From the IMG/VR virus record IMGVR_UViG_3300033182_000674, positions 1 to 64,000 of that record: a stretch of 64,000 bases of DNA; one strand, written 5' to 3'. Below the pieces are notes generated by a model that was not told where the DNA came from, made no database searches, and saw nothing but the letters and a program-made list of their open reading frames with translations. Both the position numbers and the translations under genes were made by a program. Positions within the stretch are counted from its first letter, which is position 1; every line of letters starts with the position of its first letter. Below are positions 7,158 through 44,714 of the stretch, one piece after another.

Positions 7158-8561
7158 TTAGTATTGCATGCCGCCAGAACCATGTCTGCCTGAGGTTAGA
7201 TTGCCTACATTGACTCCATTTGCATCTGATGCAAATGGAAACTTTTCTACAACGCTTGTTGTGCCTGAACCATTTTGGCCACCACTAACATATCCATGTG
7301 TAGTCGACGATTGTCCAGAACACCCTTCTCTTCCCGTTGGTAAACTAAGAACATTTACAGCAGTTCCGACTGATGCAAATGGAAATTTAGTAACTAAACT
7401 CTGAAAACCTGGATTTCCAGCTGATGTATAGCCATAAGTATCAGATTGATTTCCAGCGGCGTAATGTTGATTCACGCCGGTATCACCAACATTAGTTGCG
7501 TTACCATCTGACGAATACGAGAATTGATCAATAACATTTGTGCCATAACCGCTTGTTGAATAACCATTATTAGTTGATGATACTCCGTTTAATAGTCTTC
7601 GTGCAACAGTTAAATCACCTATATCATATCTTCCAGTGTTATTTACAAAGCCAACTTTCTCAATATCACTGTTTACTGGATTACCTCCAGTTGCATAACC
7701 ATAGTATTCAGATGAATGGCCAGCTGCTTGAACTTTATTTGTTAATCCACTTGCTGAAAATACACCAAATGATTCTGAAGGAAAATGGAATTGTATATAG
7801 GCATTAGAATATAATATTGCACCCCATTCCGGAGCTGACATGCCAACAGCAGGATAACTAATCGATGACCAAGTTGATCCAATTAGTGCCGCATTACCGT
7901 CTGAAGCAAATGAAAATCTATCAAGTGTAGAGCCAGATGCTCCCACACCTGGGTTAGATGATCCTCCTGAAACATAACCACTAACAGTTCCTTGCGCTGT
8001 AAAAGGTATGAAAAATGCTATCGTAAATTCTGACAAAGCAGTTGCTAGATTAGCGCCATCAGATGCTCTAAATGTTATACTAAATATACCACCAGAAGAA
8101 TCATAACCTGCTGATAAAATATCTTCAAGTGACTTAGCGATAATGGTGAATGTACCATTTGAATCATTACTTACTGTAGCAAGATCATTACCAGAATCCG
8201 TAATCGAATAACCCCACTGAATTGGTAGTCCATCTGGATCGGTAGCGGATAGTGTAATACTAGTTGCTATGCCACCAATAGAATCTAGTTCATATTCTGC
8301 ATCTGGCTGACCACCTGAATCCCATGTTGGTGTTTGATTAATTAATGCAATATTATACCAACTAGTGCCAGTCCAAATATAAAGACTATTTGTTTCAGCG
8401 ACATAAGCTTGATCACCAACTTGATTATTAGTCGTCGACAAATCATTTACTTCTGAATAATCTTCAGTGCCTAAAGGAACATCTGATGATATTTTTTCCT
8501 TAGTTAGCTTTTCGTTATCACCTAACAAATTTGCTAAATTTCTACCATTTGATTGAGCCAT
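7158..8561 (-). CDS. Array A paralog 5: anchor/cadherin-like N-module plus degenerate kelch-like propeller
   Basis: Shared PLGTEDY..GDQAYV..LYIWTG..WYNIALIN.TPTWDS module; GY.SGG..KFPFASD repeats; ends GMQY. Confidence 0.8.
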   Translation of the reverse strand: MAQSNGRNLANLLGDNEKLTKEKISSDVPLGTEDYSEVNDLSTTNNQVGDQAYVAETNSLYIWTGTSWYNIALINQTPTWDSGGQPDAEYELDSIGGIATSITLSATDPDGLPIQWGYSITDSGNDLATVSNDSNGTFTIIAKSLEDILSAGYDSSGGIFSITFRASDGANLATALSEFTIAFFIPFTAQGTVSGYVSGGSSNPGVGASGSTLDRFSFASDGNAALIGSTWSSISYPAVGMSAPEWGAILYSNAYIQFHFPSESFGVFSASGLTNKVQAAGHSSEYYGYATGGNPVNSDIEKVGFVNNTGRYDIGDLTVARRLLNGVSSTNNGYSTSGYGTNVIDQFSYSSDGNATNVGDTGVNQHYAAGNQSDTYGYTSAGNPGFQSLVTKFPFASVGTAVNVLSLPTGREGCSGQSSTTHGYVSGGQNGSGTTSVVEKFPFASDANGVNVGNLTSGRHGSGGMQY

Positions 8562-8570
8562 TATTATTCC

Positions 8571-9962
8571 TTAGTATTGTTGTCCAGTACCACTCATAGC
8601 GTATGTCAAATCACCAACATCTGTTGCATTAGCATCTGATGCGAATGGAAACTTATCAATAACGTTTGATGCTCCAGCAGGTGTACCACCACCAGAAGTA
8701 TATCCATAATCAGTAGATGATTGTCCTGCTGGAGAACCTCTATCTACAGACAAAGTTCCGACAGATGTTGCGTTAGCATCTGATGCGAATGAGAACTTGT
8801 CGATGGGATCACCACCAGCAGTATATCCATAGTTAGCAGAGTTTTGTCCTGTTGCTCCAAGTTTACCAACTGTTAGATCTCCGACATCTGTTGAGTTCGC
8901 ATTAGTTGCAAATGGAAACTTTTCGATAACATTTTGAATTGGATGACCAGCACCAGCGAATCCGCCTGTATTATATCCATAATCAGCAGATGATTGTCCT
9001 GCTACGCCGTATTTAGCAGAAGTTAGATCACCAACATCTGTTGCGTTCGAATTAGTTGCAAATGGAAACTTGTCGATGATGTTTGTTACTCCATCACCTC
9101 CAGAAGTATATCCATAATCAGTAGATGATTGTCCTGCTGCATCACGTCTATCAAGAGTTAATTCACCAACACCTGTTGCTGTACCGTCTGCTGCGAATGG
9201 GAATTTATCAATCTTTACATACCATACATTGTAAGTATTACCACCAGAGTTATATCCATATTCAGAAGATGATTGGCCTGCTGTTTCTCCTCTAGCAAGT
9301 GATAATGAACCAACATTTGTTGCATTAGTATCTGATGTTAATGAGAACTTACTAATTATGTTTTGGTTTGAAGTATATCCAAAGTTAGATCCCTGTGCGT
9401 GAGTGCTTGATGCTTTAAATGCTATCGTAAATTCTGACAAAGCTGTTGCAAGGTTTACACCATCAGATGCTCTGAAAGTAACATCAAAAGTACCACCAGA
9501 AGAATCATAACCGGCTGATAAAATATCATCAAGCGACTTAGCGGTAATTGTAAACGTACCGTTTGAATCATTACTTATTGTTGCTAAGTCGTTACCAGAA
9601 TCGGTAATCGAATAAGTCCATTCAATTGGTAGGCCATCTGGATCAGTTGCTGATAGTACGATTGAAGTAGCAGTGCCACCAATTGAATCTAAATCATATG
9701 CAGCTTCTGGTAAACCACCTGAATCCCATGTTGGTGTTTCATTAATCAATGCGATATTATACCAACTTACACCAGTCCAAATATAAAGACGATTCGTTGC
9801 TTCAATATAAACTTGATCGCCCACTTGGTTGTTAGTTGCTGGTAAATCATTTACAGTTGAAATATCTTTAGTACCTAAAGGAACATCCGATGATACACTT
9901 TCTGTAGTTAACTTTTCGTTATCACCTAACAAATTTGCTAAATTTCTACCATTTGACGCCAT
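8571..9962 (-). CDS. Array A paralog 4: N-module plus kelch-like propeller
   Basis: Same N-module; ~46-50 aa repeats GYTSGG..IDKFPFA.D.NATDVGDLT..GQSS; ends GQQY. Confidence 0.85.
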   Translation of the reverse strand: MASNGRNLANLLGDNEKLTTESVSSDVPLGTKDISTVNDLPATNNQVGDQVYIEATNRLYIWTGVSWYNIALINETPTWDSGGLPEAAYDLDSIGGTATSIVLSATDPDGLPIEWTYSITDSGNDLATISNDSNGTFTITAKSLDDILSAGYDSSGGTFDVTFRASDGVNLATALSEFTIAFKASSTHAQGSNFGYTSNQNIISKFSLTSDTNATNVGSLSLARGETAGQSSSEYGYNSGGNTYNVWYVKIDKFPFAADGTATGVGELTLDRRDAAGQSSTDYGYTSGGDGVTNIIDKFPFATNSNATDVGDLTSAKYGVAGQSSADYGYNTGGFAGAGHPIQNVIEKFPFATNANSTDVGDLTVGKLGATGQNSANYGYTAGGDPIDKFSFASDANATSVGTLSVDRGSPAGQSSTDYGYTSGGGTPAGASNVIDKFPFASDANATDVGDLTYAMSGTGQQY

Positions 9963-9967
9963 TTTAA

Positions 9968-11044
9968 TTATCCGATAACTATATTTTGATTTGCTGCTAA
10001 TGTAAATGGATCATATGTCCAAAGTGAAGAATTTGTTACAATATGTCCTGGTTGTACATCAGCACTCGATCCATCAGATCTACATAAATAATATGTTCCT
10101 GCTGTTGCGGTATAAGATGAAATATATATTCCATCAAACCAATAATAAACTTCACCTGTTGCAGTATTAAATAACATTGATTGTGTTCTGCCACCAATGT
10201 TATCCCATTCTTTTATGTGATCAGCAGCTGATCCTAAATGGTTAGGCGATAAATATGTGCTTGTTAAACCAAACCCTAAAGTTCCCCAAGGACCAGAACT
10301 CGTTGGTTGAAACTCTACATAGTACCATGCTGGATCACCACTTCCCATTGTATAACCAACACTACTGAACCCTAATGTTCCTAATTGTGGTGTTTGTGTT
10401 ACAGTATAACCATAACTACTAAAAGAACCAGCCCAAGAACTACTAAGAGCAAAATTAGTAGTTGTAGATCCAAGATCAATTGGTATTAATTCTGGACCAG
10501 TTATATAACTAATTTCAAATGATGAAGTCGTTGATATTAAGTTAACTCCATCTGTTGCTTTAAAGATTATATCAAATGTACCGCCTTGTGAATCATATCC
10601 AGCAGCAATAATATCATTTAATGATTTTGTAGTAATTGTCATTAATGATGAATCTTGTGTAATATCAACAAAAGATTGTGCAGAATCAGAAGCAGTATAA
10701 CTATATGTAACAGGTAAACTTTCTGGATCAAAAGCAGAAAATGATATTGTTAATGGATTACCACCATTTGAATCTAAAATATAACTTTCATTTGGCGCGC
10801 TATCCCAACTTGGTGGATCATTAATTACAGCAATACTATACCAACCTTGGCCAGTCCACATAAATAAACGACTTGTTTCTTCAACAAATGCTTTTGCACC
10901 AACTGCATTATTAGCTGCAGGCAAACTCGCAGCATTAGAATATGATTTAGTACCTAATGGAAAATCAGCTACTAAATCATCTGCTGATATAGTAGTTTCA
11001 GTTCCTAATAAATTAGCTAGATTTCTGGCATTTGATTGAGCCAT
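9968..11044 (-). CDS. Array A paralog 3: N-module plus unrelated beta-rich C-terminal domain
   Basis: N-module recognisable; C-terminal ~175 aa lacks propeller repeats (WYYVEF..GTLGFGLT, possibly SPRY/ConA-like). Confidence 0.75.
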   Translation of the reverse strand: MAQSNARNLANLLGTETTISADDLVADFPLGTKSYSNAASLPAANNAVGAKAFVEETSRLFMWTGQGWYSIAVINDPPSWDSAPNESYILDSNGGNPLTISFSAFDPESLPVTYSYTASDSAQSFVDITQDSSLMTITTKSLNDIIAAGYDSQGGTFDIIFKATDGVNLISTTSSFEISYITGPELIPIDLGSTTTNFALSSSWAGSFSSYGYTVTQTPQLGTLGFSSVGYTMGSGDPAWYYVEFQPTSSGPWGTLGFGLTSTYLSPNHLGSAADHIKEWDNIGGRTQSMLFNTATGEVYYWFDGIYISSYTATAGTYYLCRSDGSSADVQPGHIVTNSSLWTYDPFTLAANQNIVIG

Positions 11045-11054
11045 TTATTATTCC

Positions 11055-12518
11055 TTAGTATTGTTGTCCAGATGCATTAAATCTTTTAACTGTTAAATCG
11101 CCAATACTTGTTGCACTAGCATCTGCCGCAAATGGATATTTGTCAATTGTAGTTCTACCAAATGGCGCCAAACCATATCCGCCATCGATAGGGAAGAAAT
11201 ATAAACCGCCAGAAGAATATCCATAACCATCAGAAGATTGGCCAGCACCAAGTTGTCTATTTTGTGTTAATGTACCAACAGATGTTGCAGTACCACCCGA
11301 CGCAAATGGGAATTTATCAATTACATTTGTTGCCCCAGCGTTTGAACCACCAGCAATATAACCATGTGTAGCAGATGAACTTGTAGCAAGGCCTTGTCTA
11401 GCAACTGATAAAGTGGCTGCTGAAGATGCATTAGTATCTGATGCAAATGGGAACTTATCAATCGTATCAAAGTATGTAGTACCAGGACTAGTACCACCAC
11501 TTGAAAAGCCTTCTTCGGCAGATGAATGACCATCAAGGTTTTGTCTTGCTATAGAAAGGTCTGCAGTATAAGATGAATTTCCATCAACAGCAAATGGGAA
11601 TTTATCAATTCTAGAAGTTACGCCTGGAGTCCAACCACCAGCAGCATAGCCATTTTCTGTTGAACTGTGACCAGCTATATTTTGTCTTGCATCTGTTAAA
11701 CTACCAATTTGAGATGCATTACCATCACTAGAAAAAGCAAACTTATCCATTACCGCACTCCATGATGGAGTTACACCACCGGTATCATATCCGTTTTCTG
11801 CAGAAGATTGACCAGCACCACCTTGTCTTACTTGCGTAAGATTACCAACATCAGTTGCGTTTGCATCGGATGCAAATGGAAACTTGTCGATAACATTGAA
11901 AGTTGCATCTACTGGATTTTCATCATAGCCGCCAGATGTATATCCATAGTTTGTTCCACCAAAACCAGCGATTTTAAATGAAATAGAAAATTCAGACAAA
12001 GCGGTTGCTAGATTAACACCATCAGATGCTCTGAAAGTAACATCAAAAGTACCACCAGATGAATCATAACCTGCATTTAATATATCAGTAAGGGACTTAG
12101 CGGTAATAGTGAATGTTCCGTTCGAATCATTTGTAATAGTAGCGAGGTCGTTGCCCGAATCTGCAATCGAATAAGTCCATTGAACTGCTAGTCCATCTGG
12201 ATCTGTTGCTGCGAGTGTAATAGTAGTTGCAGTTCCACCAATAGAATCCAGTTCGTATGCAGCTTCTGGTAAACCACCAGAATCCCAAGTAGGTGTTTGA
12301 TTAATCAATGCAATATTATACCAACCTTGACCTGTCCAAATGTATAAACGATTTGTCTCTGTTACAAATACTTGATCACCTACACTTGCTGTTCCTGGTA
12401 AAGATGCTGCTGTTGCATATTCTTCGGTACCTAATGGAATATCTGATGATAAACTTTCAGCTGGTATAGTAGCACTAGGACCTAAAAGTTTTGCTAAATT
12501 AACTGCGTTTGTTGTCAT
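11055..12518 (-). CDS. Array A paralog 2: N-module plus six-repeat propeller
   Basis: Six DK(F/Y).F repeats; ends GQQY. Confidence 0.85.
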   Translation of the reverse strand: MTTNAVNLAKLLGPSATIPAESLSSDIPLGTEEYATAASLPGTASVGDQVFVTETNRLYIWTGQGWYNIALINQTPTWDSGGLPEAAYELDSIGGTATTITLAATDPDGLAVQWTYSIADSGNDLATITNDSNGTFTITAKSLTDILNAGYDSSGGTFDVTFRASDGVNLATALSEFSISFKIAGFGGTNYGYTSGGYDENPVDATFNVIDKFPFASDANATDVGNLTQVRQGGAGQSSAENGYDTGGVTPSWSAVMDKFAFSSDGNASQIGSLTDARQNIAGHSSTENGYAAGGWTPGVTSRIDKFPFAVDGNSSYTADLSIARQNLDGHSSAEEGFSSGGTSPGTTYFDTIDKFPFASDTNASSAATLSVARQGLATSSSATHGYIAGGSNAGATNVIDKFPFASGGTATSVGTLTQNRQLGAGQSSDGYGYSSGGLYFFPIDGGYGLAPFGRTTIDKYPFAADASATSIGDLTVKRFNASGQQY

Positions 12519-12528
12519 TTCTTATTCC

Positions 12529-13965
12529 TTAGTGTTGTTGTCCTGCTGCACCATGTCTAGCAACGGTTATATCGCCGACGTCAGTCGCATTACCGTCTGC
12601 TGCAAATGGGAACTTATCAATTACATTAGAAACTCCTGGTAAAAAACCACCAGAAGCATATCCATAATCAGTAGATGATTGTCCGACAGCCCATAATCTA
12701 GCAACTGTTAGATTACCAACGTCTGTTGCATTAGCGTCAGTTGCGAATGGAAACTTGTCGATTACATTTGTTGGACCTGGAAATCCACCAGAAGCGTATC
12801 CATATTCAGAAGATGATTGACCTGCTAGAGCATTTTTAACACCAGTTAGATCACCAACATCTGTTGCGTTGCCATCAGATGTAAATGAGAACTTGTCGAT
12901 AACATTCGAATATGCAGTTCCATAACCGCCTGCAGAATATCCGTTTTCAGATGATGATTGTCCTGTTACTCTATATCTAGCAACGGTTAGATCTCCGATA
13001 TCTGTTGCGTTAGTGTCTGTTGCGAACGGGAACTTGTCGATGACGTTGGATGGACCTCCACCACCAGAAGCATACCCATAGTCAGAAGAAGATTGTCCTG
13101 CAGGTGTGTTATTCCTAGCAACGGTTAGATCACCAACATCTGTTGCATTAGCATCGGTTGCGAATGGAAACTTGTCGATAACGTCTGATATTCCTGCATC
13201 ATAACCAGCAGAAGTATATCCAGATTCAGATGATGATTGTCCTGCTGCAGAATATCTAGCACTCGTTAAATCACCAACATCTGTTGCGTTGCCATCAGAT
13301 GTAAATGAGAATTTATCAATTACATTTACAACAGCAGGATCTTGGCCACCAGTAGCATATCCATAGTTAGAACCTTGGAAAGAATACGGTAAAGCAAATG
13401 CTATTGTAAATTCAGATATGGCTGTAGCGATATTGATATCATCGGTTGCTTTAAAGGTAACATCAAATACACCACCATTAGAATCATAACCTGCTGCAAT
13501 AATATCTGCAAGGGATTTTGCAGTAATAGTGAATGTACCATTTGAATCATTAGTAATAGTCGCAAGGTCATTTGCAGAATCTGTAACAGAATATGTCCAC
13601 TTAATAGGTAAACCTTCAGGATCTGTTGCAGATAATTGAATTACTGTAGCAGTACCGCCAATTGAATCTAGTTCGTATGCAGCTTCTGGTAAACCGCCAG
13701 AATCCCACGTTGGGCTTTCATTAACAATTGCAATATTATACCAGCCTGCGCCAGTCCAAATGTATAAACGATTTGTTGCTTGAACAAATGCTTGATCACC
13801 AATTTGATTTCCTGATGCGGGTAAATCATTAGCAGTTGAATAATCTTCAGTACCTAATGGAATATCTGCTGATAATTGAGATGCATCGATTGTACCAATG
13901 GATGAACTGGTGACCGTACCATCGTTATTAATGAGTTTACCTAATAATAGACTTTTTGTTGGCAT
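12529..13965 (-). CDS. Array A paralog 1: N-module plus six-repeat kelch-like propeller
   Basis: Six highly regular VIDKF(P/S)F..D.NATD(V/I)G(D/N)(L/I)T repeats; ends GQQH. Confidence 0.88.
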   Translation of the reverse strand: MPTKSLLLGKLINNDGTVTSSSIGTIDASQLSADIPLGTEDYSTANDLPASGNQIGDQAFVQATNRLYIWTGAGWYNIAIVNESPTWDSGGLPEAAYELDSIGGTATVIQLSATDPEGLPIKWTYSVTDSANDLATITNDSNGTFTITAKSLADIIAAGYDSNGGVFDVTFKATDDINIATAISEFTIAFALPYSFQGSNYGYATGGQDPAVVNVIDKFSFTSDGNATDVGDLTSARYSAAGQSSSESGYTSAGYDAGISDVIDKFPFATDANATDVGDLTVARNNTPAGQSSSDYGYASGGGGPSNVIDKFPFATDTNATDIGDLTVARYRVTGQSSSENGYSAGGYGTAYSNVIDKFSFTSDGNATDVGDLTGVKNALAGQSSSEYGYASGGFPGPTNVIDKFPFATDANATDVGNLTVARLWAVGQSSTDYGYASGGFLPGVSNVIDKFPFAADGNATDVGDITVARHGAAGQQH

Positions 13966-13999: not shown

Positions 14000-14007
14000 T
14001 ATTTATA
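14000..14007 (-). promoter_or_regulatory. Late promoter upstream of array A
   Basis: TATAAATA ~35 nt upstream of the 13965 start codon. Confidence 0.8.
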
Positions 14008-15696: not shown

Positions 15697-15933
15697 TCAT
15701 GCTATAAACCACCTATAAATTCCCCATAAATCTATAAAGATAAAGAAGAAGTTTTGTATAAACATTGGTACATCTTTATGTTTTATAAACAAATAAGATA
15801 ATGCGATATGACCACTCAAGAATATAAAGAAACCATATCGACTAATTTCAATATTAGAAGATAGTAATAGTGCTGCAGTTAAAAAACATGCAGTACCAAA
15901 CCATTTTAAAAATTCTATTCTTTTTTCACTCAT
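15697..15933 (-). CDS. Small multi-pass membrane protein
   Basis: Three hydrophobic segments; KWFGT..FL..A.LL and QN.FF..ID.WGIYRW pattern. Confidence 0.65.
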   Translation of the reverse strand: MSEKRIEFLKWFGTACFLTAALLLSSNIEISRYGFFIFLSGHIALSYLFIKHKDVPMFIQNFFFIFIDLWGIYRWFIA

Positions 15934-16385
15934 TTATAAAACTTCACAGTGCGTGATTGACCTTGATCATCAGTAAATGTAATTGTTGAATGACTATACA
16001 CTCGTTCTTCTCGACGAGAATGTCGTGTTACTTCTGAGCAAGTTTCTTCTTGACGATAACCAACTACACCACCTTCACGTTTAGCACCTTGTCTAGCACC
16101 AATGATAGCGCCTAATGCGGTCATTGCATCTTTACCACTACCACTACCAAATTGATGTCCAATAGCACCACCAATAATTGTACCTGTAATAGCACCAGCT
16201 ACATCATCATTTCGAGTTTGACCATAAATTGGAACCTCTACCGTTCGACATTCATGATGTGTTTGTGGTACTAATGTGGTTACCATTTTATAATGATCAG
16301 TTACATAACCATTCGCGACAGCGCCTTCTGCATTAGCTAATCCAGAAGTTAATGCCAATGCCATTACAATACTAATCTTTTTCAT
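15930..16385 (-). CDS. Glycine-zipper 2TM (YcfJ-like) envelope protein
   Basis: Signal peptide; GAITGTIIGGAIGHQFGSGSGKDAMTALGAIIGA glycine zipper; C...EVPIY and C.EV Cys pair. Confidence 0.85.
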   Translation of the reverse strand: MKKISIVMALALTSGLANAEGAVANGYVTDHYKMVTTLVPQTHHECRTVEVPIYGQTRNDDVAGAITGTIIGGAIGHQFGSGSGKDAMTALGAIIGARQGAKREGGVVGYRQEETCSEVTRHSRREERVYSHSTITFTDDQGQSRTVKFYK

Positions 16386-17007
16386 TAATCTTCTCTCTCA
16401 TTTTTTGCATTTTAACATATGATTCATACCATTCAGATGGAGTCATCATTTCAGTTTTACGATATCCCATCTTTAATCCAACTTCACGATATGATTTCTT
16501 TAATATCTTAGCAGCTTTAGTGCCAAGGAATCGTGATACTAGTTTAATATGAGTTAGTCTAAATGGTAAACCATGATGAGCATTACCAGCTGAATGAGCC
16601 AACTCATGAAGCAGTGTATCCATTTTAAGACCATACCTAGGACACAACTGAATCTTGTTATGCCATGCTAGTCCAGCAGTGCCGCTTCTATAACCCATAT
16701 CTTTCTTTTCTAAGATTTCAACTTCATGACCAGCAATGTCTTTCCAAAGTTTAGATTTAAGAATACGTTTAGTTACCTTACGTGCTTCTTTATAATCCTC
16801 AAACTTTAGAATCTTAATGCCTTCTTCAATCCATTTAGAACGAGCAATACGTTCAGCTTTATAAACCTTGCTTTGTTCTGAATCTTTAAAAGCAGTTCGA
16901 CCTTTACGACGTTGCTTCATAGTATGCTTATGACAATAGTCAGCATACTTATTCGCTAACTCAGTTGAACCAAGAATGTCAGCCCATTTGTCAAATTCAT
17001 ACAACAT
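16372..17007 (-). CDS. Putative zincin metallopeptidase
   Basis: TLLHELAH followed by HG..F motif. Confidence 0.65.
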   Translation of the reverse strand: MLYEFDKWADILGSTELANKYADYCHKHTMKQRRKGRTAFKDSEQSKVYKAERIARSKWIEEGIKILKFEDYKEARKVTKRILKSKLWKDIAGHEVEILEKKDMGYRSGTAGLAWHNKIQLCPRYGLKMDTLLHELAHSAGNAHHGLPFRLTHIKLVSRFLGTKAAKILKKSYREVGLKMGYRKTEMMTPSEWYESYVKMQKMREKINEKD

Positions 17008-17008
17008 G

Positions 17009-17287
17009 TTAAGCAGCTTTAAGAAGTGAAGCAGTTACATTCCATGTGCCATCGAATTCAGTAATAACAACGATGTTTTTAGGATTGACCTTTTTAATAA
17101 TACCTGACATTTTGCCATTCTTACCAGTCCATTTGACTTTATCACCAACTGAAAATTTAGCAGCAGCTTTACGTGAATTCATTTTAGTTTGATAATTGAA
17201 TTGATCAGCAATCAAATTCATATCTGATGCTGATGCTTTAGCGAAAAGATCTGCAATGGTTTTTAATTCGTTTGAAGTAAGACTCAT
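17009..17287 (-). CDS. Small protein with SH3/KOW-like C-terminus
   Basis: FSVGDKVKW.GKNG...G.IKKVN.K.IVV..WNV; first gene after promoter cassette 2. Confidence 0.65.
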   Translation of the reverse strand: MSLTSNELKTIADLFAKASASDMNLIADQFNYQTKMNSRKAAAKFSVGDKVKWTGKNGKMSGIIKKVNPKNIVVITEFDGTWNVTASLLKAA

Positions 17288-17289
17288 AG

Positions 17290-17417
17290 TTTCTATCCTT
17301 TTTCCAATTTATGGTTATATTCTACCATGATTCTTCTCAAATGTACACCTTTTTGTGAAAAAAGTTTTTCCTTTAAAATCAATGGCTTAGGAGATAGTGT
17401 GACGTAAGCCATTGATT
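17290..17417 (-). repeat. Promoter/stem-loop cassette copy 2 (PeSL-like)
   Basis: IR arms 17377-17389 and 17405-17417; TGTACA-17-TAGAAT; leader CCATAAATTGGAAAAAGGATAGAAA with SD. Confidence 0.9.
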
Positions 17418-17477
17418 CTATTAACTATTTTATTTTTTAATAGGGGTATAAATCTTAATTAATTTCTTTAATAATGG

Positions 17478-17687
17478 TCAAATATTCCATTCTTTTTGCT
17501 CATCAATAGCTATCCGAGCACATTGGATATAATCTTTGTCTTCTTCTGACATGACACTCCAGAATTTAGTGACGCTATCAATAACTTCATTGACTACTTC
17601 TGGATTCTTTAAGTGATAGTTACCTTCCATCCAATGTTGTATTGCGTTCATTCGATCGTTAATTTTATCGTAAATATTTGCCATCAC
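17478..17687 (-). CDS. Conserved T4-like hypothetical protein
   Basis: WMEGNYHL..PE.V...I.SV.KFWSV.SEEDKDYIQCA. Confidence 0.65.
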   Translation of the reverse strand: MMANIYDKINDRMNAIQHWMEGNYHLKNPEVVNEVIDSVTKFWSVMSEEDKDYIQCARIAIDEQKEWNI

Positions 17688-19660: not shown

Positions 19661-19737
19661 TGGTCTCGGTGGCTGGATTCGAACCAACGACCCCGTGGTC
19701 CCAAACCACGTATTCTACCAGACTGAACTACACCGAG
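19661..19737 (-). tRNA. tRNA-Pro(TGG)
   Basis: Cloverleaf: CTCGGTG/CACCGAG acceptor, CGTGG-TTTGGGA-CCACG anticodon arm, GTTCGAATC, encoded CCA. Confidence 0.96.
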
Positions 19738-19742
19738 TAGAT

Positions 19743-19816
19743 TGGAGCGGGTAGCGAGAATCGAACTCGCAGCATCAGCTTGGAAGGCTGAGGTATTACC
19801 ATTATACGATACCCGC
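19743..19816 (-). tRNA. tRNA-Gly(TCC)
   Basis: GCGGGTA/TACCCGC acceptor, TCAGC-CTTCCAA-GCTGA, encoded CCA. Confidence 0.96.
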
Positions 19817-19817
19817 A

Positions 19818-20363
19818 TTATATTAAGTATGTACAATTCTTATCAGATTTATGATTATAATACATTTGACCTTCATTGTACATAGATTTTTTAATAAATT
19901 TTTTAAAGTCTTTTTCTACTTTAGTAATTAACATCCATGAAACACTATATGTATTATCTACATTATTGATTGTTTCGTAATCACCTACGATAAGTTGCTC
20001 AACATAATCGATGTTTTTCAAAAAAGTCGACACATTTTCAGGTTTATCCCAAGAATACCAACGAACATCTGGCTTACTAAGAAACTTCATACGCTTGACT
20101 TCAGTTCGTTTACCATTCCACATCACATCCCATGCGTAAGTACTACGATCTTTTTCATCAAATTTAGAAGGATTCTTTGTAGCGCCTTGACGCTTTAAGG
20201 CCAGTTCAAGAATAACACCCGCTTTAACAGAGTTATAAACTTGAGCATATCCTCTATTTCGATTACGCTTAGGACAGGCATGAATGTCTTTAGCCATTGT
20301 TTCTATGAAGTCTAACTCTTCGTCAGACATTTTAAAAGTAATATTCTTAAGCTTCATAATCAA
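19818..20363 (-). CDS. Hypothetical protein, possible PD-(D/E)xK nuclease fold, inside the tRNA cluster
   Basis: G..LE helix, then WDV..and TEVKR spaced like a PD-(D/E)xK core; stop abuts tRNA-Gly. Confidence 0.45.
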   Translation of the reverse strand: MIMKLKNITFKMSDEELDFIETMAKDIHACPKRNRNRGYAQVYNSVKAGVILELALKRQGATKNPSKFDEKDRSTYAWDVMWNGKRTEVKRMKFLSKPDVRWYSWDKPENVSTFLKNIDYVEQLIVGDYETINNVDNTYSVSWMLITKVEKDFKKFIKKSMYNEGQMYYNHKSDKNCTYLI

Positions 20364-20373
20364 CTCTAAAAAT

Positions 20374-20449
20374 TGGAGCCAGTGATAGGAATCGAACCTA
20401 CGACATCCACATTACAAGTGTGGTGCTCTGCCTGCTGAGCTACACTGGC
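20374..20449 (-). tRNA. tRNA-Thr(TGT)
   Basis: GCCAGTG/CACTGGC acceptor, CCACA-CTTGTAA-TGTGG, CCA. Confidence 0.96.
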
Positions 20450-20531
20450 AAATTAGACAGTTTCTTAACTTGTCTAGGTTAGCCCAGATGGTGCACCACT
20501 CATTCAATTATGTGGAATGAGACACAAAATT
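20450..20531 (-). ncRNA. Candidate small structured RNA between tRNA-Leu and tRNA-Thr
   Basis: Stems TAGACA/TGTCTA and CTCATTC/GAATGAG plus palindrome TGGTGCACCA cover most of the 82-nt spacer. Confidence 0.3.
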
Positions 20532-39565: not shown

Positions 39566-40984
39566 TTAGTATTGTTGTCCTGCTGACCTATATCTACCAG
39601 AGGTTATATCACCTACATCTGTTGCATTAGCATCTGATGCGAATGGGAACTTATCTATAACATTAACATAGCCATCAGTTGCATTAAAGCCACCAGATGA
39701 ATAACCATCTGATGTAGATGATTGACCTGTTACACCCCATCTAGAATGAGTCAGATCACCAACATCGGTTGCATTGCCATCGGTTGCAAATGAAAACTTG
39801 TCGATGATCGTCTGAACCGAACCGGCGTCGCCACCAGAAGTATAACCATGCTCAGAAGAAGATTGACCTGCTGCACCATATCTAGTAACGGTTATATCAC
39901 CGACATCTGTTGCATTAGCATCAGTTGCGAATGGGAATTTGTCTATAACATTGCCACCATAATTTAGTCCACCTGAAGTATAACCATGCTCAGAAGAAGA
40001 TTGTCCTGCTGAATAACCTCTAGCAATGGTTAGATCGCCGACATCAGTCGCATTTCCATTTGTTGCAAACGGGAATTTGTCAATTACATTTATATTATAA
40101 GCACCAGAATTGTATCCATACTCAGTTGATGATTGGCCTGATAAATAATATCTACCAACGGTTAGATTACCGACATCTGTTGCATTAGCATCAACTGCGA
40201 ATGGGAATTTGTCTATAACATTTCCAACTGCTGGTACGGGTGAACCACCAGAAGTATATCCATTTTCTGCAGAAGATTGACCTGCTGGATAACTTCGGTT
40301 TGTAGTACTTAAATTAGCAACAAATATTGAGTTCGCATCAGATGCAAATGGGAACTTTTCAATGAGAGTTTCACCACCGGCACCACCACTATTGTATCCA
40401 TAATTAGAACCTTGAGCTTGAGTGCCACCTGCAGCAAATGATATAGTAAATTCAGACAACGCAGTAGCAAGGTTATTACCATCAGATGCTCTGAAAGTAA
40501 CATCAAAAGTACCGCCTTCTGAATCATAACCAGCACTTAATATATCTGCAAGGGACTTAGCAGTAATCGTAAACGTACCATTAGAATCGTTCGTAATAGT
40601 CGCAAGATCATTACCCGAATCTGTTACTAAGTAAGACCATTGAATTGGAAATCCATCTGGATCTGTCGCGGCCAATGTAATAGTAGTTGCAATTCCACCA
40701 ATAGAGTCTAGATCATAAGCAGCTTCTGGTAAACCACCAGAATCCCAAGTAGGAGTAGCATTAATTAAAGCAATACTATACCAACCAGATCCATTCCAGA
40801 TGTATAGTTTATTATTTGATGCTACAAATGCTTGATCACCAATTTGATTGCCGGTTGCTGGTAAATTATCAATAGTAGCATAATCTTCAGTGCCTAAAGG
40901 AACATCTGCTGAAATAGCAGTTTCACCAATTTTACCATCTTGGCCGATGATTTTTGTTAGATAAAAAGATTTAGTAATTGCCAT
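39566..40984 (-). CDS. Array B paralog 4: N-module plus six-repeat propeller
   Basis: Same N-module and IDKFPFA.DANATDVGD repeats as 12529-13965; ends GQQY. Confidence 0.88.
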   Translation of the reverse strand: MAITKSFYLTKIIGQDGKIGETAISADVPLGTEDYATIDNLPATGNQIGDQAFVASNNKLYIWNGSGWYSIALINATPTWDSGGLPEAAYDLDSIGGIATTITLAATDPDGFPIQWSYLVTDSGNDLATITNDSNGTFTITAKSLADILSAGYDSEGGTFDVTFRASDGNNLATALSEFTISFAAGGTQAQGSNYGYNSGGAGGETLIEKFPFASDANSIFVANLSTTNRSYPAGQSSAENGYTSGGSPVPAVGNVIDKFPFAVDANATDVGNLTVGRYYLSGQSSTEYGYNSGAYNINVIDKFPFATNGNATDVGDLTIARGYSAGQSSSEHGYTSGGLNYGGNVIDKFPFATDANATDVGDITVTRYGAAGQSSSEHGYTSGGDAGSVQTIIDKFSFATDGNATDVGDLTHSRWGVTGQSSTSDGYSSGGFNATDGYVNVIDKFPFASDANATDVGDITSGRYRSAGQQY

Positions 40985-40996
40985 TTCTTTTATTCC

Positions 40997-42451
40997 TTAA
41001 ATTTGATAACCACCGGTATGTTCTGGTCCGCCAGTCATTGATAAAACTGATTGTGAAGTAATTTCATTTGCATAAGCAAATTTTATTTTCTGACTGCTGC
41101 TGCCGGTGCTTACATATGCACTTGTTAATTCACATGAAGAAGCGCCATATTGATTACTTTGTGATAAATCTCCAACATTTGAAGTATTCCCTTCATTGGC
41201 AAATGGCATTTTTCTTAATGTTGCGTAGTAAGTACCAAATATTAAATCTCGGCCGCCATATGCATAACCATCAGTTGCACTAGCAGCACCCACAGGACCA
41301 TTACGAGCTCCATCTATGTTACCTATATTACCTAAAGAACCATTACTTGCAAAACTATATTTTTGTATATTACTCAATGCCGCTTGAGATGGGGGAAAAT
41401 ACTGGCCGCCAGCAACATAACCATTCTCTACACCGTTCATTGGTGCTTGATCTACTGATTTTTGTGTTAAACTACCACTGTTTATTGGTGTTTCGGATGC
41501 AAAAGGATATCGTTTAACTGCAGCTTGAACTGGTGGATTCCATGAATATGGGTTATAACCGCCCATTCTATAACCATCTGTTTCGGAAGACATTCCAGCT
41601 CCACCATATAGATTGTAAGCAAAACTACTTTCTATTGAGGTTGTTGGAAAAGTAACAGTTGAGCCACCTGCTGCAAATGGAAATTTTGCAACGTTATTAT
41701 TATTTCCATTTGGTACTCCTGGATAAGTATAACCACTAAATACATATCCAGCTTCTTTTGATGACATACCTACATGATAGCCTCGTACACTTGGCGCTCC
41801 ATTAATTGGGTGATATGCTTCAGTTGTAATAGTTTCAGAAGCATATGGAAATCTTAGTATTTGATTAGCAGTTGTATAATAACCAGTAGTTGATCCTTGA
41901 AATACATATGGAATATATAAACTAATTGTAAATTCAGACAAAGCTGAGGCAATATTAATTCCATCTGTTGCTCTAAAAGTAACATTAAACGTTCCACCTG
42001 TTGAATCATATGATTCAATTTGAGATGTTGGTAATGCTGTAATAGTAAATACACTTGAATCTTGTTGAATAGTTGCCAAATATTGAGCAGAATCAGATGC
42101 TGAATAATCCCACGTAATAGGTAATCCTTCAGGATCAGATGCTGATAATTGTATAATAGTTGAACCAACATTATACGAATCTAATTCGTATTCTGCTGCA
42201 GGTTGACCACCAGAATCCCATGTGGGACTCTGATTGATTAAAGCGATATTATACCAACCGGCTCCAGTCCAAATGTATAAACGATTTGTCGCTTGTACAA
42301 ATGCTTGATCACCTACTTGATTACCAGTTGCAGGTAAGTCATTTGCTGTAGTATAATCTTCAGTACCTAATGGAACATCGGCACTCAACTTTTCAGTATT
42401 AATTGTAGTTGAGGTATTTAATAGTTTTGATAAATTAACTGAATTAGACAT
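40997..42451 (-). CDS. Array B paralog 3: N-module plus divergent propeller
   Basis: N-module intact; repeats diverged (RFPYASE, KFPFAAG, RYPFASE, KYSFASN, KMPFANE). Confidence 0.8.
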   Translation of the reverse strand: MSNSVNLSKLLNTSTTINTEKLSADVPLGTEDYTTANDLPATGNQVGDQAFVQATNRLYIWTGAGWYNIALINQSPTWDSGGQPAAEYELDSYNVGSTIIQLSASDPEGLPITWDYSASDSAQYLATIQQDSSVFTITALPTSQIESYDSTGGTFNVTFRATDGINIASALSEFTISLYIPYVFQGSTTGYYTTANQILRFPYASETITTEAYHPINGAPSVRGYHVGMSSKEAGYVFSGYTYPGVPNGNNNNVAKFPFAAGGSTVTFPTTSIESSFAYNLYGGAGMSSETDGYRMGGYNPYSWNPPVQAAVKRYPFASETPINSGSLTQKSVDQAPMNGVENGYVAGGQYFPPSQAALSNIQKYSFASNGSLGNIGNIDGARNGPVGAASATDGYAYGGRDLIFGTYYATLRKMPFANEGNTSNVGDLSQSNQYGASSCELTSAYVSTGSSSQKIKFAYANEITSQSVLSMTGGPEHTGGYQI

Positions 42452-42461
42452 TTTTTATTTC

Positions 42462-43556
42462 CTATACCGTTATGATACTGCCTTCTGTTATGTTTGACCA
42501 TGTAGGATTACCATTTGTTTGATTTGATCTCAATGTCGCAAAGGTTACCCAATTTGCTGCATCATAAGTACCGTTTAAATTTCCAGTGTAATATTGTAAT
42601 AATGTTTCTTGTGGGCATCTATTAGGTCGTGCACCAATAAATGTTCTCAAATTTAATGAACCACCTTCCATTGCAGTGTATTCAATTGGATCATGTAAAT
42701 ACCATGCGATCCAATGTCCTGTTCCAGATGACCAAGATGTTCTTGCACCATTAAACATATTACCAGGACCAGCATCCCAACCACCATTATACGTTGTTTG
42801 TGTAAATGGATCACTGGCGTTTGAAGTATATATGCCATATTTTCCAGGAACTGGTATTTGCCCATATGTTGCGGACATAGCAGTTCCAGATGTTCCTGAC
42901 GTTGATAATCTAGTACCATCGCCTAAATAAATTCCTCCAGCATTATCAATATCCCAGAGATAATAACTTGGACCAACACTAGCATATAATCTCCACAATT
43001 GGAAAGTATTTGGCGCCCAACCTAATGTAAAGTTTGAACTTGCTGTTGCTGTATTTACTCCATCAGATGCTTTAAATGTAATATCAAATGAACCACCACT
43101 TGAATCATATCCAGCATCTAAAATATTTTGTAATGACTTTGGTGCAATTATAAACGTTCCATTTGAATCATTTGTAACTGTAACAAAATCATCACCTGAA
43201 TCCATTTCGTAAGTCCAATTTAAGACTTGCTCTTCTGGATCAGTTGCGATCAAATTAATTGTTGTTGAAGCAACAGAATCTAATACATACGCTGCTTCAG
43301 GTAATCCTGCAGAATCCCATATTGGAGATTCATTTACTAATGATATATTGTACCAACCTTGTCCATTCCAAAGATATAATCTATTTGTAGAAGCAACATA
43401 GGCTGTATCACCAGTATCATTACCACTTAATGGTAAATCATTTGGCGTTGCATAATCTTCAGTACCTAATGGTACTTCATCGGAAATAGCAGTTTGAACA
43501 ATCTTACCATTATCTCCAATTATTAAACCAAGATTAAAAGACTTTGAAACGGCCAT
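42462..43556 (-). CDS. Array B paralog 2: N-module plus unrelated C-terminal domain (possibly discoidin-like)
   Basis: N-module, then NMFNG..SW..WIAWY..PNRCP..LQY..NWV pattern. Confidence 0.72.
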   Translation of the reverse strand: MAVSKSFNLGLIIGDNGKIVQTAISDEVPLGTEDYATPNDLPLSGNDTGDTAYVASTNRLYLWNGQGWYNISLVNESPIWDSAGLPEAAYVLDSVASTTINLIATDPEEQVLNWTYEMDSGDDFVTVTNDSNGTFIIAPKSLQNILDAGYDSSGGSFDITFKASDGVNTATASSNFTLGWAPNTFQLWRLYASVGPSYYLWDIDNAGGIYLGDGTRLSTSGTSGTAMSATYGQIPVPGKYGIYTSNASDPFTQTTYNGGWDAGPGNMFNGARTSWSSGTGHWIAWYLHDPIEYTAMEGGSLNLRTFIGARPNRCPQETLLQYYTGNLNGTYDAANWVTFATLRSNQTNGNPTWSNITEGSIITV

Positions 43557-43559
43557 ATA

Positions 43560-44714
43560 TTAATCCATTGTTAATGTATCAATATAATCATTAGCATCCA
43601 TCATACGAACAGATGGTGTAGTGCCAGATCTTCTATTACAGCTAGCACCAATGTATGTTACACCACTAACTGTACCATCACCAATTTTAACCCAGTTATT
43701 ACTAGTATGACTAGATTGTCTATACCACCAACGTGATACGCCATTTGCAACTCTTACAGCAAACCACCAATCAGTACAAGTAGAACCTTGATATGCATTA
43801 TATGTAGTGTCAATACCAGTAAAACCAAAGCCATTCGAATCAGTATCATTACTTAATCGACTAACACCTTCAACAACTTGATTACTTGCGTTGTATAAGT
43901 ACATACCACCACCACCTCTATTACTGAAGCTGGTCGCATAACCAGAGAAATAATATACTGCTAAGTATTCATCACCTAATTCCATTGTCCTTGGTTGAAC
44001 ATGCATACCATCAAACATTTTGGTTGTACTTGTAAGAGTCCATGTCCCAGTGTTAGCATCGTATGAATCAGTCCATGTACCACCATCACTATACGCATCT
44101 AATAAAACACGAGTTGAATTAGCCCAAGCATCTCCTTGAGTATCTAAGTTAACTGCAACACCATTGGAAAAGGTAATTGTAAATTCTGATACAGCACCAA
44201 TGATATTAATACCATCAGTCGCTCTAAATGTTACAGCAGCAGTACCACCTGCAGAATCATATCCAGCTGCTAGAATATCTTCAAGTGTTTTCGCAGTAAT
44301 TGTAAACTCATCATTGTTTTGAGAAATTGTAAATAGATCTGCAGCAGAATCAGCTGCTTCATATGTCCATTGTATAGGTAAACCTTCTGGATCAGATGCA
44401 GCCAATTGAATTACAATAGGTGTTCCACTATTTGAATCCAGTTCATATGCAGCTTGAGGTTGGCCATTGGAGTCCCATATTGGACTTTCATTAATTAAAG
44501 CAATATTATACCAGCCAGCTCCAGTCCAGACATAAAGACGATTTGTTTCAGCGACATAAGCTTGATCACCAACTTGATTACCAGTAGATGGTAATTGCGT
44601 GGCTGTACTATAGTCTTCGGTTCCTAGTGGAATATCTTCAGACAAAGCTTGTGTTGATATCTTGTTATCTTGTCCAAGAATTAAGCCTAAATTAAAAGAC
44701 TTAGATACAGCCAT
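43560..44714 (-). CDS. Array B paralog 1: N-module plus unrelated beta-sandwich-like C-terminus
   Basis: N-module, then Trp/Tyr-rich strands (WWFAVRV..VSRWWYR..WVKIG). Confidence 0.72.
   Translation of the reverse strand: MAVSKSFNLGLILGQDNKISTQALSEDIPLGTEDYSTATQLPSTGNQVGDQAYVAETNRLYVWTGAGWYNIALINESPIWDSNGQPQAAYELDSNSGTPIVIQLAASDPEGLPIQWTYEAADSAADLFTISQNNDEFTITAKTLEDILAAGYDSAGGTAAVTFRATDGINIIGAVSEFTITFSNGVAVNLDTQGDAWANSTRVLLDAYSDGGTWTDSYDANTGTWTLTSTTKMFDGMHVQPRTMELGDEYLAVYYFSGYATSFSNRGGGGMYLYNASNQVVEGVSRLSNDTDSNGFGFTGIDTTYNAYQGSTCTDWWFAVRVANGVSRWWYRQSSHTSNNWVKIGDGTVSGVTYIGASCNRRSGTTPSVRMMDANDYIDTLTMD

What the first reader, a model, noticed from the sequence alone, without database searches (positions are those of the whole stretch)
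7158..13965. Array A: five tandem late genes with a constant anchor module and exchangeable propeller or other heads
All five share a ~150-180 aa module (PLGT.DY, LY.WTG.GWY.IA, then a cadherin/Ig-like A.DP..LP..W/Y..TF.A.DG segment). Four carry ~48-aa kelch-like repeats, consistent with a six-bladed propeller, and one carries an unrelated head. The scaffold (IDKFPFA.D.NATDVGDLT, GQSS, GY.SGG) is fixed while the residues after AR and after GG vary in each blade, like a repertoire of binding surfaces. A TATAAATA promoter heads the array and no signal peptides are evident, which suggests virion-displayed adhesins (inference).
Basis: partly seen in the sequence, partly recalled or inferred. Interest (0 to 1): 0.75.

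Follow-up and report, generated by a model that had tools for sequence, protein, structure and literature searches.

The report
Modular phage adhesin genes with swappable heads
An uncultured estuarine/marine T4-like phage carries five tandem late-type genes, part of an 18-gene family, that join one conserved N-terminal module to different binding-type heads, mostly six-bladed kelch-like propellers, and related phages have swapped these heads by recombination; this is most likely a repertoire of host-binding proteins, but display on the virion is not shown.

Summary
Five minus-strand genes (7158-13965), 5-10 nt apart, follow a TATAAATA 35 nt before the first ATG.

- **Module:** all five share a ~180-aa N-terminal module: a short helix, a small beta-sheet and an Ig/cadherin-like domain (model pLDDT 86.6).
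- **Heads:** four carry a six-bladed kelch-type propeller (TM 0.86-0.91 to Keap1/KLHL12/designed SAKe6). One carries a likely SPRY/ConA-like head.
- **Variation:** differences between close homologues fall in the B-C and D-A loops (34-36% of positions against 5-10% in strands), which form the usual kelch binding face.
- **Family size:** the array is one of five clusters. Eighteen paralogues (12% of the 219.7-kb genome) share the module, with further LamG, discoidin-like and Gly-rich heads. Two clusters lie beside baseplate and tail-fibre genes.
- **Exchange:** in near-identical relatives (flanks 92-100% identical, dS ~0.1) the propellers are replaced (dS ~0.95), and one relative has the modules of two neighbouring genes swapped.

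Best reading: late-expressed, virion-displayed modular adhesins that diversify by cassette recombination. Virion location, docking site and ligand are untested. This is a new variant of the known "conserved anchor plus variable receptor-binding head" design.

The parts
14000..14007 (-). TATAAATA, a T4-type late-promoter-like motif heading array A, 35 nt before the ATG at 13965
   Evidence: Across the genome, many of the 44 copies lie 22-50 nt before same-strand ATGs, including baseplate genes and another array of the family.
12529..13965 (-). Gene A5 (478 aa): N-module at 13396-13965, six-bladed propeller at 12529-13395
   Evidence: Propeller pLDDT is ~90, and TM by target is 0.86-0.91 to kelch domains.
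11055..12518 (-). Gene A4 (487 aa): N-module at 11976-12518, six-bladed propeller at 11055-11975
9968..11044 (-). Gene A3 (358 aa): N-module at 10505-11044, non-propeller head at 9968-10504, probably a SPRY/ConA-like beta-sandwich
   Evidence: ESM Atlas gives feature score 0.91 and TM 0.64-0.70 to SPRY clusters. The head has no sequence homologue and no Pfam hit.
8571..9962 (-). Gene A2 (463 aa): N-module at 9417-9962, six-bladed propeller at 8571-9416
   Evidence: The module model has pLDDT 86.6.
7158..8561 (-). Gene A1 (467 aa): N-module at 8013-8561, most divergent propeller at 7158-8012 (five blades detected, the second degenerate)
8562..8570 (-). Example of the 5-10-nt gene junctions. Three of the four keep the pattern ...GQQY stop followed by AAGGAATAAnA(A)ATG, with the Shine-Dalgarno motif right after the stop codon. 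The A3-A2 junction differs.
   Evidence: This points to operon-like co-transcription and translational coupling (inference).
39566..44714 (-). Array B of the same family, in the window but outside the finding: two propeller genes (39566-40984, 40997-42451) and two genes with other heads (42462-43556, 43560-44714). TATAAATA at 45812-45819 lies upstream of the preceding 313-aa gene.
   Evidence: Both propeller cassettes are replaced in relative L008.

Best explanation
Array A is one operon of a large paralogous family of modular surface-binding proteins in an uncultured estuarine/marine T4-like myovirus. Each protein has three parts: a short N-terminal helix with a small beta-sheet (candidate docking or oligomerisation element), an Ig/cadherin-like spacer, and a C-terminal ligand-binding head. 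In four genes the head is an unusually symmetric six-bladed kelch-type propeller. Its strands and C-D hairpins are held near consensus, while its B-C and D-A loops on the usual kelch binding face vary. In the fifth gene the head is probably a SPRY/ConA-like sandwich. The genes are probably transcribed late from one T4-type promoter and mounted on the virion, most likely on baseplate or fibre structures, as accessory adhesins for host-surface glycans or proteins. The repertoire changes by homologous recombination between the conserved module at the 5' side and the conserved last strand plus intergenic junction at the 3' side, so heads and modules are reassorted within and between genomes. Shown: gene structure, folds, distribution of variation, recombinant alleles, promoter motif. 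Inferred: late expression, virion location, docking, binding function, ligand.
For: - Paralogy and shared module.
- Kelch fold: AF2 model and Foldseek against PDB, E 1e-17 to 1e-19, TM by target 0.86-0.91.
- Module fold: pLDDT 86.6; residues 73-182 are Ig/cadherin-like at VIA Z ~9, with weak Cadherin_5/Big_9/PKD matches in 12-22 of 60 members.
- Loop variation: entropy is 2.7-3.0 bits in B-C and 2.1-2.3 in D-A, against 0.7-1.1 in strands. In 13 close pairs the differing positions are B-C 36%, D-A 34%, A-B 22%, C-D 14% and strands 5-10%; B-C+D-A against A-B+C-D gives odds ratio 2.8, p 2e-18.
- Other heads in the family are binding-type domains: LamG x3, F5/8-type-C-like, Gly_rich_2, SPRY-like.
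- Context: array D lies next to baseplate hub, gp48, gp53, gp5 and gp6 homologues and has TATAAATA 28 nt before its ATG. Array C lies near a baseplate-wedge/tail-fibre-connector match and a 978-aa paralogue with tail-fibre PHROG matches.
- The LamG head resembles part of the cyanophage S-RIM50 gp7 'baseplate wedge initiator'.
- In another 201-kb viral contig, three tandem propeller genes directly follow a collagen-like tail-fibre gene.
- A kelch-type protein of jumbo phage CBB was found in virions by mass spectrometry (PMC5259590).
- Exchange in array B: flanks are 92-100% identical with dS 0.07-0.10, while the propeller heads have dS ~0.95 and dN 0.30-0.73. One breakpoint lies at the module/head junction, one in mid-module, and both 3' breakpoints lie at the stop codons.
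- Exchange in array A: the A5 allele is replaced in L164, and the modules of A1 and A2 are reciprocally swapped in L163.
Against: - There is no direct evidence of expression or virion incorporation.
- The N-module has no match in 50,697 cultured-phage records, so no proteomic anchor exists.
- Arrays A and B lie among replication and auxiliary genes, not in the structural module. In 80 distant relatives that carry the flanking 166-aa gene, no family member is nearby.
- TATAAATA is not over-represented by count alone (16 observed against 12.8 expected in the window).
- The phage already encodes canonical-looking tail-fibre and giant structural proteins.
- The oligomeric state is unknown.
- The face assignment of the loops rests on kelch topology and DSSP, not on coordinates.
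- Some of the pairs share sequences, so they are not fully independent.
Confidence: 0.6

Rival explanations
1. The proteins are capsid or neck decoration fibres, Hoc-like in logic, rather than baseplate or tail adhesins. The module would dock on the head, and the heads would mediate weak adherence to particles, mucus-like polymers or cells.
For: The module has an Ig-like domain, as in many phage surface decorations; Foldseek also matches the lambda tail-tube C-terminal Ig-like domain at TM by target 0.71. Arrays A and B lie outside the tail module. Many equivalent capsid sites could hold many paralogues at once.
Against: Arrays C and D adjoin baseplate and fibre genes. In three paralogues the module follows collagen-like triplets, and in the 978-aa paralogue it follows tail-fibre-like repeats. 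Homology to Hoc or Soc was not tested here.
Confidence: 0.15
2. The proteins are not structural. They act inside or outside the infected cell, for example as kelch-type adaptors that bind host or defence proteins, or as soluble lectins released at lysis.
For: Kelch propellers are classic protein-protein interaction domains (Keap1 and KLHL matches). Poxvirus kelch proteins act inside cells (BFVD matches). The array lies among non-structural genes. Rapid allele turnover would also fit an arms race with defence systems.
Against: The partner heads (LamG, discoidin-like, SPRY/ConA-like, Gly-rich) and the collagen-like and fibre-like extensions are typical of extracellular fibres. A late-type promoter motif is present. 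Other clusters of the family sit beside baseplate genes.
Confidence: 0.12
3. The propeller heads are enzymes, such as glycosidases or depolymerases of the sialidase or galactose-oxidase kind, that cut surface polysaccharide rather than only binding it.
For: Six-bladed propellers include sialidases. The conserved C-D hairpin (A/S)(S/T)D(A/G)NAT resembles an Asp-box in sequence and position (recalled from memory, a lead only; consensus). A 'galactose oxidase' name appears among the BFVD matches.
Against: All 50 top PDB matches are kelch interaction domains or designed kelch proteins, and none is a sialidase. No glycosidase family matches in Pfam. The conserved residues repeat equally in all six blades instead of forming one asymmetric active site.
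Confidence: 0.08

Closest known systems
Kelch-repeat beta-propellers (Keap1, KLHL12/3/17; designed symmetric SAKe6 proteins)
   Same: Six four-stranded blades. The GG doublet ends strand B and an Arg precedes strand A. Closure appears to use the C-terminal strand. TM by target is 0.86-0.91 and rmsd 1.9-2.6 A. The variable loops are the B-C and D-A loops, which bind ligands in Keap1 (established knowledge).
   Different: No Pfam Kelch model matches even at E<=1, and identity is only 16-22%. The blades are near consensus and show no positional orthology between paralogues (0.52 against 0.50), which is why designed symmetric proteins are the top matches. The setting is phage, with an N-terminal Ig-like module.
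Kelch-like virion proteins of jumbo phages (CBB_552; PhiPA3, Noxifer and Phabio 'virion structural proteins')
   Same: A kelch-type propeller in phage proteins. CBB_552 was detected in virions by mass spectrometry (PMC5259590). Fold matches appear in BFVD.
   Different: Identity is 13-18%. The shared N-module is absent. No multigene family with interchangeable heads is described, and the authors call such domains unusual in phages.
Receptor-binding fibres with a conserved N-terminal anchor and diverse C-terminal binding domains (eCIS eBAP fibres, PMC12923769; multi-tailspike phages such as CBA120 and phiK64-1, from own knowledge)
   Same: The same logic: a conserved N-terminus and varied C-terminal binding domains, including beta-propeller lectins on collagen-like shafts. 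Several such genes occur per genome.
   Different: The module here is a different, undescribed domain pair, absent from Pfam and PHROG annotation. The family has 18 members, its docking partner is unknown, and the module is internal in some members.
Staphylococcal phage phi11 receptor-binding protein with a five-bladed propeller (PMC4901313, listed)
   Same: A beta-propeller serves as the receptor-binding platform of a baseplate protein that needs cell-wall GlcNAc (paper abstract).
   Different: It has five blades, is not kelch-type, belongs to a siphophage of a Gram-positive host, and is encoded by a single gene.
Hypothetical propeller proteins of Synechococcus phage S-SKS1 and of many uncultured viruses (PHROG 19111)
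   Same: The same propeller family. S-SKS1 is 31.6% identical with 8 places in its genome. PHROG 19111 matches at E 1e-17 to 1e-25. IMG/VR contigs are 57-67% identical, and 51 of 69 fetched loci have adjacent propeller genes.
   Different: Those proteins are mostly ~335 aa with short, different N-termini and lack the 180-aa module. None has a known function.

Membership tests
Kelch-type beta-propeller | Closed propeller of six four-stranded antiparallel blades | tested here: met
   The AF2 model has propeller pLDDT ~90, and DSSP shows 6 x 4 strands. Foldseek against PDB gives E ~1e-17 to 1e-19 and TM by target 0.86-0.91 to Keap1, KLHL12 and SAKe6. 115 of 120 homologues have six blades.
Kelch-type beta-propeller | Match to curated Kelch sequence models (Pfam Kelch_1-6) | tested here: not met
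   No Kelch family is listed for any of the five proteins at E<=1 or for the array B propellers at E<=0.01. The GG doublet and the Arg before strand A are present, but the usual Trp of strand D is not.
Ig/cadherin-like domain (Big_9, Cadherin_5, PKD) | Seven-strand beta-sandwich of Ig type | tested here: met
   In the model (pLDDT 86.6), residues 73-182 align to Sidekick, SraP, cadherins and S-layer Ig domains at VIA Z 8.2-9.4. Foldseek E is 1e-4 to 1e-5.
Ig/cadherin-like domain (Big_9, Cadherin_5, PKD) | Score above the Pfam gathering threshold | tested here: not met
   Matches are below threshold only: Cadherin_5 at 22.6-23.5 bits against a cut-off of 26.5 in two paralogues. 22 of 60 module sequences match Cadherin_5, 15 Big_9 and 12 PKD at E<=1.
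Phage receptor-binding or tail-fibre protein with an N-terminal anchor | Conserved N-terminus with divergent C-terminal binding domains among paralogues or alleles | tested here: met
Phage receptor-binding or tail-fibre protein with an N-terminal anchor | Gene located in the tail or baseplate module | tested here: inconclusive
   Arrays C and D adjoin baseplate and fibre genes. Arrays A and B do not.
Phage receptor-binding or tail-fibre protein with an N-terminal anchor | Physical presence in the virion and binding to a host receptor | not testable with these tools
   This needs virion proteomics, cryo-EM and binding assays. No cultured relative carries the module.
Phage receptor-binding or tail-fibre protein with an N-terminal anchor | Trimeric fibre assembly | not testable with these tools
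   Three paralogues have collagen-like Gly-X-Y triplets before the module, which hints at trimers. No multimer prediction was available. The PTL_trimer and Mtd_N leads for residues 1-78 scored only 0.80-0.85 and were not confirmed by Pfam.
DGR (diversity-generating retroelement) variable protein | Reverse transcriptase encoded in the genome | tested here: not met
   PF00078 has no match in the complete 219,676-base record, and the controls were positive.
SPRY/ConA-like domain (head of A3) | SPRY-type beta-sandwich recognised by fold or sequence | tested here: inconclusive
   ESM Atlas gives feature score 0.91 and TM by query 0.64-0.70 to SPRY clusters. There is no Pfam SPRY match and no sequence homologue.
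Sialidase-type (Asp-box) six-bladed propeller | Closest structural neighbours are sialidases or glycoside hydrolases | tested here: not met
   The 50 best PDB matches are all kelch domains or designed kelch proteins.

The most novel reading that the evidence does not exclude
The phage may run a docking system in which 13 or more paralogues with the same N-terminal element compete for the same virion sites. Each particle would then carry a random mix of kelch, SPRY, LamG, discoidin-like and Gly-rich heads. That would be a built-in bet-hedging adhesin repertoire, renewed in the population by cassette recombination. The symmetric kelch propeller would be a new, very widespread and still unnamed class of multivalent phage lectin.
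Probability: 0.2. Interest if true: 0.8.

Novelty: new variant of a known kind. Interest (0 to 1): 0.6.

Why it matters
Host recognition by uncultured marine and estuarine T4-like phages is largely unknown. This phage gives 12% of its genome to one modular family, and the heads of that family are the parts that differ between otherwise near-identical genomes, so they are prime candidates for host-range determinants. Neither domain is in curated family libraries, yet both are very common. The module matches 3,552 cluster representatives. The propeller matches more than 4,300 proteins and usually occurs in tandem arrays. Naming and characterising these domains would annotate thousands of viral 'hypothetical proteins'. 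The natural, near-symmetric kelch scaffold with variable loops would also be a convenient binder scaffold to study.

Tried and rejected
- **DGR-driven variation:** no reverse transcriptase is present, and the propeller divergence has saturated dS, which means allele replacement rather than targeted mutagenesis.
- **Inversion or shufflon switching:** all genes face the same way, and no invertase was seen in the annotated neighbours.
- **Giant structural proteins as repeated docking scaffolds:** the 4,627-, 2,565-, 1,817-, 1,733- and 1,543-aa proteins show no internal repeats and no similarity to the family.
- **Pfam and PHROG naming:** only PHROG 19111 (function unknown) and chance-level Pfam hits were found.
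- **PDB sequence search with the module profile:** only weak Ig-like hits, E >= 0.012.
- **Trimerisation-domain leads for residues 1-78 (PTL_trimer, Mtd_N, T4_gp9_10_N):** Atlas scores of 0.78-0.85 are within chance range, and Pfam gives no support.
- **Close relatives of array A:** none in IMG/VR (flanking gene <=40% identical; no family genes nearby) and none in JGI metagenome contigs. Two short contigs found by exact protein look-up did help.
- **Laying metagenome contigs on the array:** this gave only 140-1,000-nt pieces and cross-mapping of conserved blade sequence from other organisms. It shows presence in estuary and marine samples, but the joints are unreliable.
- **Literature search:** several 'kelch' hits were the author name Kelch.


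Full report
**Setting**

The window is the first 64 kb of a single 219,676-base IMG/VR virus record that CheckV rates 100% complete. GC content is about 35%. The record carries T4-type genes:
- gp32 single-strand DNA-binding protein, a gp46/47-like exonuclease and a 2OG-Fe(II) oxygenase;
- portal and sheath;
- baseplate hub and wedge proteins.

The closest cultured phages by gp32 are only 54-59% identical: Phage C48C1, Methylophilales phage Melnitz, Pelagibacter phage HTVC008M and cyanomyoviruses. Estuary, marine and seawater metagenomes hold 6-35% of the array's sampled words. This is therefore an uncultured estuarine/marine T4-like myovirus of unknown host.

**The observation**

Five minus-strand ORFs occupy 7158-13965 exactly as described. 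I call them A5 to A1 in the order of transcription.
- Gaps between them are 5-10 nt. Three of the four junctions keep the same pattern...GQQY, a stop codon, AAGGA, a few bases, then ATG. This suggests duplication of whole units and translational coupling.
- The only TATAAATA nearby lies at 14000-14007, 35 nt before the first ATG.
- By count the motif is not enriched (16 against 12.8 expected in the window). However, many of the 44 genomic copies lie 22-50 nt before same-strand start codons, including baseplate genes. That is the position expected for T4-type late promoters (established T4 knowledge).
- No hydrophobic segment exists in any of the five proteins.

**The propeller**

- An AlphaFold model of A5, built on 17 homologues, gives a confident propeller (residues ~195-478, pLDDT ~90).
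- Its best PDB neighbours are designed symmetric kelch proteins (SAKe6), KLHL12 and Keap1, with TM by target 0.86-0.91 and rmsd about 2-2.5 A.
- A blade profile finds six blades in A2, A4 and A5, and in 115 of 120 database homologues. A1 has five blades plus a degenerate second one.
- No Pfam Kelch model matches, so this is a kelch-type fold outside the curated kelch families. PHROG 19111 (function unknown) does match.
- The blades are unusually alike. Mean identity within a gene reaches 0.65, and a blade is no closer to the same-numbered blade of a paralogue than to any other blade (0.52 against 0.50). At DNA level A5 still shows a 141-nt period.

**Where the propeller varies**

Per-position entropy shows fixed strands (0.7-1.1 bits) and a fixed C-D hairpin (1.2-1.4 bits). 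The B-C loop varies most (2.7-3.0 bits, with length changes), followed by D-A (2.1-2.3) and the three-residue A-B turn (2.4-2.6).

In 13 closely related pairs, the share of positions that differ is:

| Element | Positions differing |
|---|---|
| B-C loop | 36% |
| D-A loop | 34% |
| A-B turn | 22% |
| C-D hairpin | 14% |
| Strands | 5-10% |

B-C plus D-A against A-B plus C-D gives an odds ratio of 2.8 (p 2e-18). In kelch topology the B-C and D-A loops lie on one face, which binds ligands in Keap1 (established knowledge). I could not map the positions onto coordinates, so the face assignment is an inference from DSSP and topology.

**The shared module**

- A model built on 60 diverse sequences (pLDDT 86.6) shows a helix at residues 4-12, a small three-stranded sheet at about 50-72, and a beta-sandwich at 73-182.
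- The sandwich matches Ig and cadherin-like domains of adhesins, cadherins and S-layer proteins at Z 8.2-9.4. Foldseek also matches the Ig-like domain of the lambda tail tube at TM by target 0.71.
- Weak Cadherin_5, Big_9 and PKD matches occur in 12-22 of the 60 members.
- The first ~72 residues have no recognised relative.
- An exhaustive profile search finds the module in 3,552 cluster representatives (816 at E<=1e-30). It is mostly N-terminal, in proteins of 149-3,769 aa.
- It is absent from 50,697 cultured-phage records.

**The family is much larger than the finding**

BLASTP within the genome finds 18 genes with the module, in five places:
- array A;
- array B (39566-44714);
- 71608-79015;
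- 86924-89860;
- 212628-217968.

Together they encode 9,036 aa, which is 12% of the genome. Their heads include LamG x3 (two genes), Gly_rich_2, an F5/8-type-C-like domain, further propellers, and SPRY/ConA-like sandwiches. The A3 head scores 0.91 by features and TM 0.64-0.70 to SPRY clusters, with no sequence homologue.

In three paralogues the module follows collagen-like triplets, and in a 978-aa paralogue it follows tail-fibre-like repeats. The module therefore behaves as a connector. Only the extreme N-terminus, conserved among the short paralogues, is a candidate docking element.

**Evidence bearing on virion location**

All of this evidence is indirect.
- The cluster at 212628-217968 has TATAAATA 28 nt upstream and sits beside baseplate hub, gp48, gp53, gp5 and gp6 homologues.
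- The cluster at 71608-79015 sits near a protein that matches 'baseplate wedge tail fiber protein connector'.
- The LamG head resembles part of the giant gp7 'baseplate wedge initiator' of cyanophage S-RIM50.
- In a 201-kb IMG/VR contig, three tandem propeller genes directly follow a collagen-like tail-fibre gene.
- Of 69 fetched loci with propeller genes, 51 have adjacent same-strand copies, up to nine per locus.
- A kelch-type protein of jumbo phage CBB is a mass-spectrometry-confirmed virion component, and its authors call such domains unusual in phages (PMC5259590).

Against this, arrays A and B lie among non-structural genes. Array A is also not syntenic in 80 distant relatives.

**Exchange of heads is directly visible**

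*Array B (contig L008).* A sediment-metagenome contig is collinear with the array B region. Flanking genes are 97-100% identical in protein, with dS 0.07-0.10. Two segments drop to 37-75% nucleotide identity:
- 42200-41000, running from mid-module to the stop codon of the 484-aa gene;
- 40450-39560, running from the module/head junction to the stop codon of the 472-aa gene.

Their heads have dS about 0.95 and dN 0.30-0.73. They are therefore replaced alleles, not fast local mutation.

*Database proteins.* Three proteins share 98-99% identical modules but have propellers only 52-59% identical.

*Array A.* Contig L164, from the same sample as L008, is 95-100% identical upstream, including the promoter. 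Identity falls to 60-77% through most of A5 and returns to 95% at the gene's end. Contig L163, from another sample, keeps the A2 and A1 propellers at 91-98% but has their modules exchanged. The gene with the A2 propeller carries an A1-type module (89% nucleotide identity), and the gene with the A1 propeller carries an A2-type module (93%).

No reverse transcriptase is encoded, so a DGR is excluded.

**Interpretation**

The best-supported reading is a late-expressed family of modular surface-binding proteins. Their heads are reassorted by homologous recombination between conserved flanks, and they are most likely mounted on the virion as accessory adhesins (confidence 0.6).

The near-perfect six-fold sequence symmetry, with a conserved hairpin in every blade, is more typical of multivalent propeller lectins than of kelch adaptors. 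This is an inference and was not tested.

Rival readings are capsid decoration (0.15), non-structural host- or defence-binding proteins (0.12), and enzymatic heads (0.08).

The design of a conserved anchor plus variable receptor-binding domains is well known, for example in the eCIS fibres catalogued in PMC12923769. What is new here:
- both domains are undescribed in curated libraries;
- the family has 18 members in one T4-like genome;
- the kelch scaffold is highly symmetric;
- cassette exchange is clearly documented between natural relatives.

Noticed in passing
window 31889-39522: A run of about 12 genes of ~200-280 aa lies next to array B. Their 97-100% identical counterparts in contig L008 carry Sulfotransfer_1, Glyco_transf_25 (x2), Methyltransf_24 and UDP-glucose dehydrogenase domains. 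Part of the cluster (window ~35956-37900) has no counterpart in L008, so it is also variable between relatives. It could modify the fibres, the host surface or DNA.
   Followed up: partly
G000:C1:78566-79015 (outside the window; L001:14566-15015): This 149-aa family member has a module cut at about residue 136 and then joined in frame to a short tail ending in the propeller's last strand (...AAGQQY). A 488-aa metagenomic protein (P0003) has the same N-terminus with a full propeller, so this copy looks like an internal deletion.
   Followed up: partly
G000:C1:156138-170021 (L081:1138-15021): A 4,627-aa ORF with TATAAATA 50 nt upstream lies in the structural region, together with ORFs of 2,565, 1,817, 1,733 and 1,543 aa. 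It has almost no family matches and no internal repeats detectable by BLAST.
   Followed up: partly
window 7158-8012: The A1 propeller is the most divergent in array A (35-36% identical to that of A2), and its second blade is degenerate. It may be decaying or adapting to a different ligand.
   Followed up: no
window 12529-13395 and all family propellers: The C-D hairpin (A/S)(S/T)D(A/G)NAT is conserved in nearly every blade, in this phage and across 723 metagenomic blades. It resembles an Asp-box in sequence and position. It may be purely structural, or a repeated metal or sugar site.
   Followed up: partly
L018:8699-11890 and 16666-17652 (IMGVR_UViG_3300007609_000003, 201 kb): Another large virus has three tandem propeller genes (367, 358 and 325 aa) with their own shared short N-terminus. 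They directly follow a 795-aa collagen-like fibre gene and a 1,040-aa gene, and are followed by what look like 2OG-oxygenase genes (judged by eye from the translations). A fourth propeller gene lies 5 kb further on.
   Followed up: partly
window 19661-20619, 30874-30950, 32586-32660: Six tRNA genes are present (Pro-TGG, Gly-TCC, Thr-TGT, Leu-TAA, Met-CAT, Arg-TCT), all on the minus strand.
   Followed up: no
window 45820-47151: A 443-aa protein joins a ferrochelatase-like N-terminal half (PHROG 2954) to a 2OG-Fe(II) oxygenase C-terminal half (PHROG 61). It lies just upstream of the TATAAATA that heads array B.
   Followed up: no
window 15930-16385: This 151-aa protein has a clear N-terminal signal-peptide-like segment and a glycine-zipper-like stretch. 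It is the only nearby gene that looks exported, in contrast with the array proteins.
   Followed up: no
window 8610-8809 and 13010-13209: When metagenome contigs were laid on the array, depth rose 10-30-fold at the most conserved blade-coding stretches. Many other organisms or viruses in the same estuary samples therefore carry near-identical blade sequence.
   Followed up: partly
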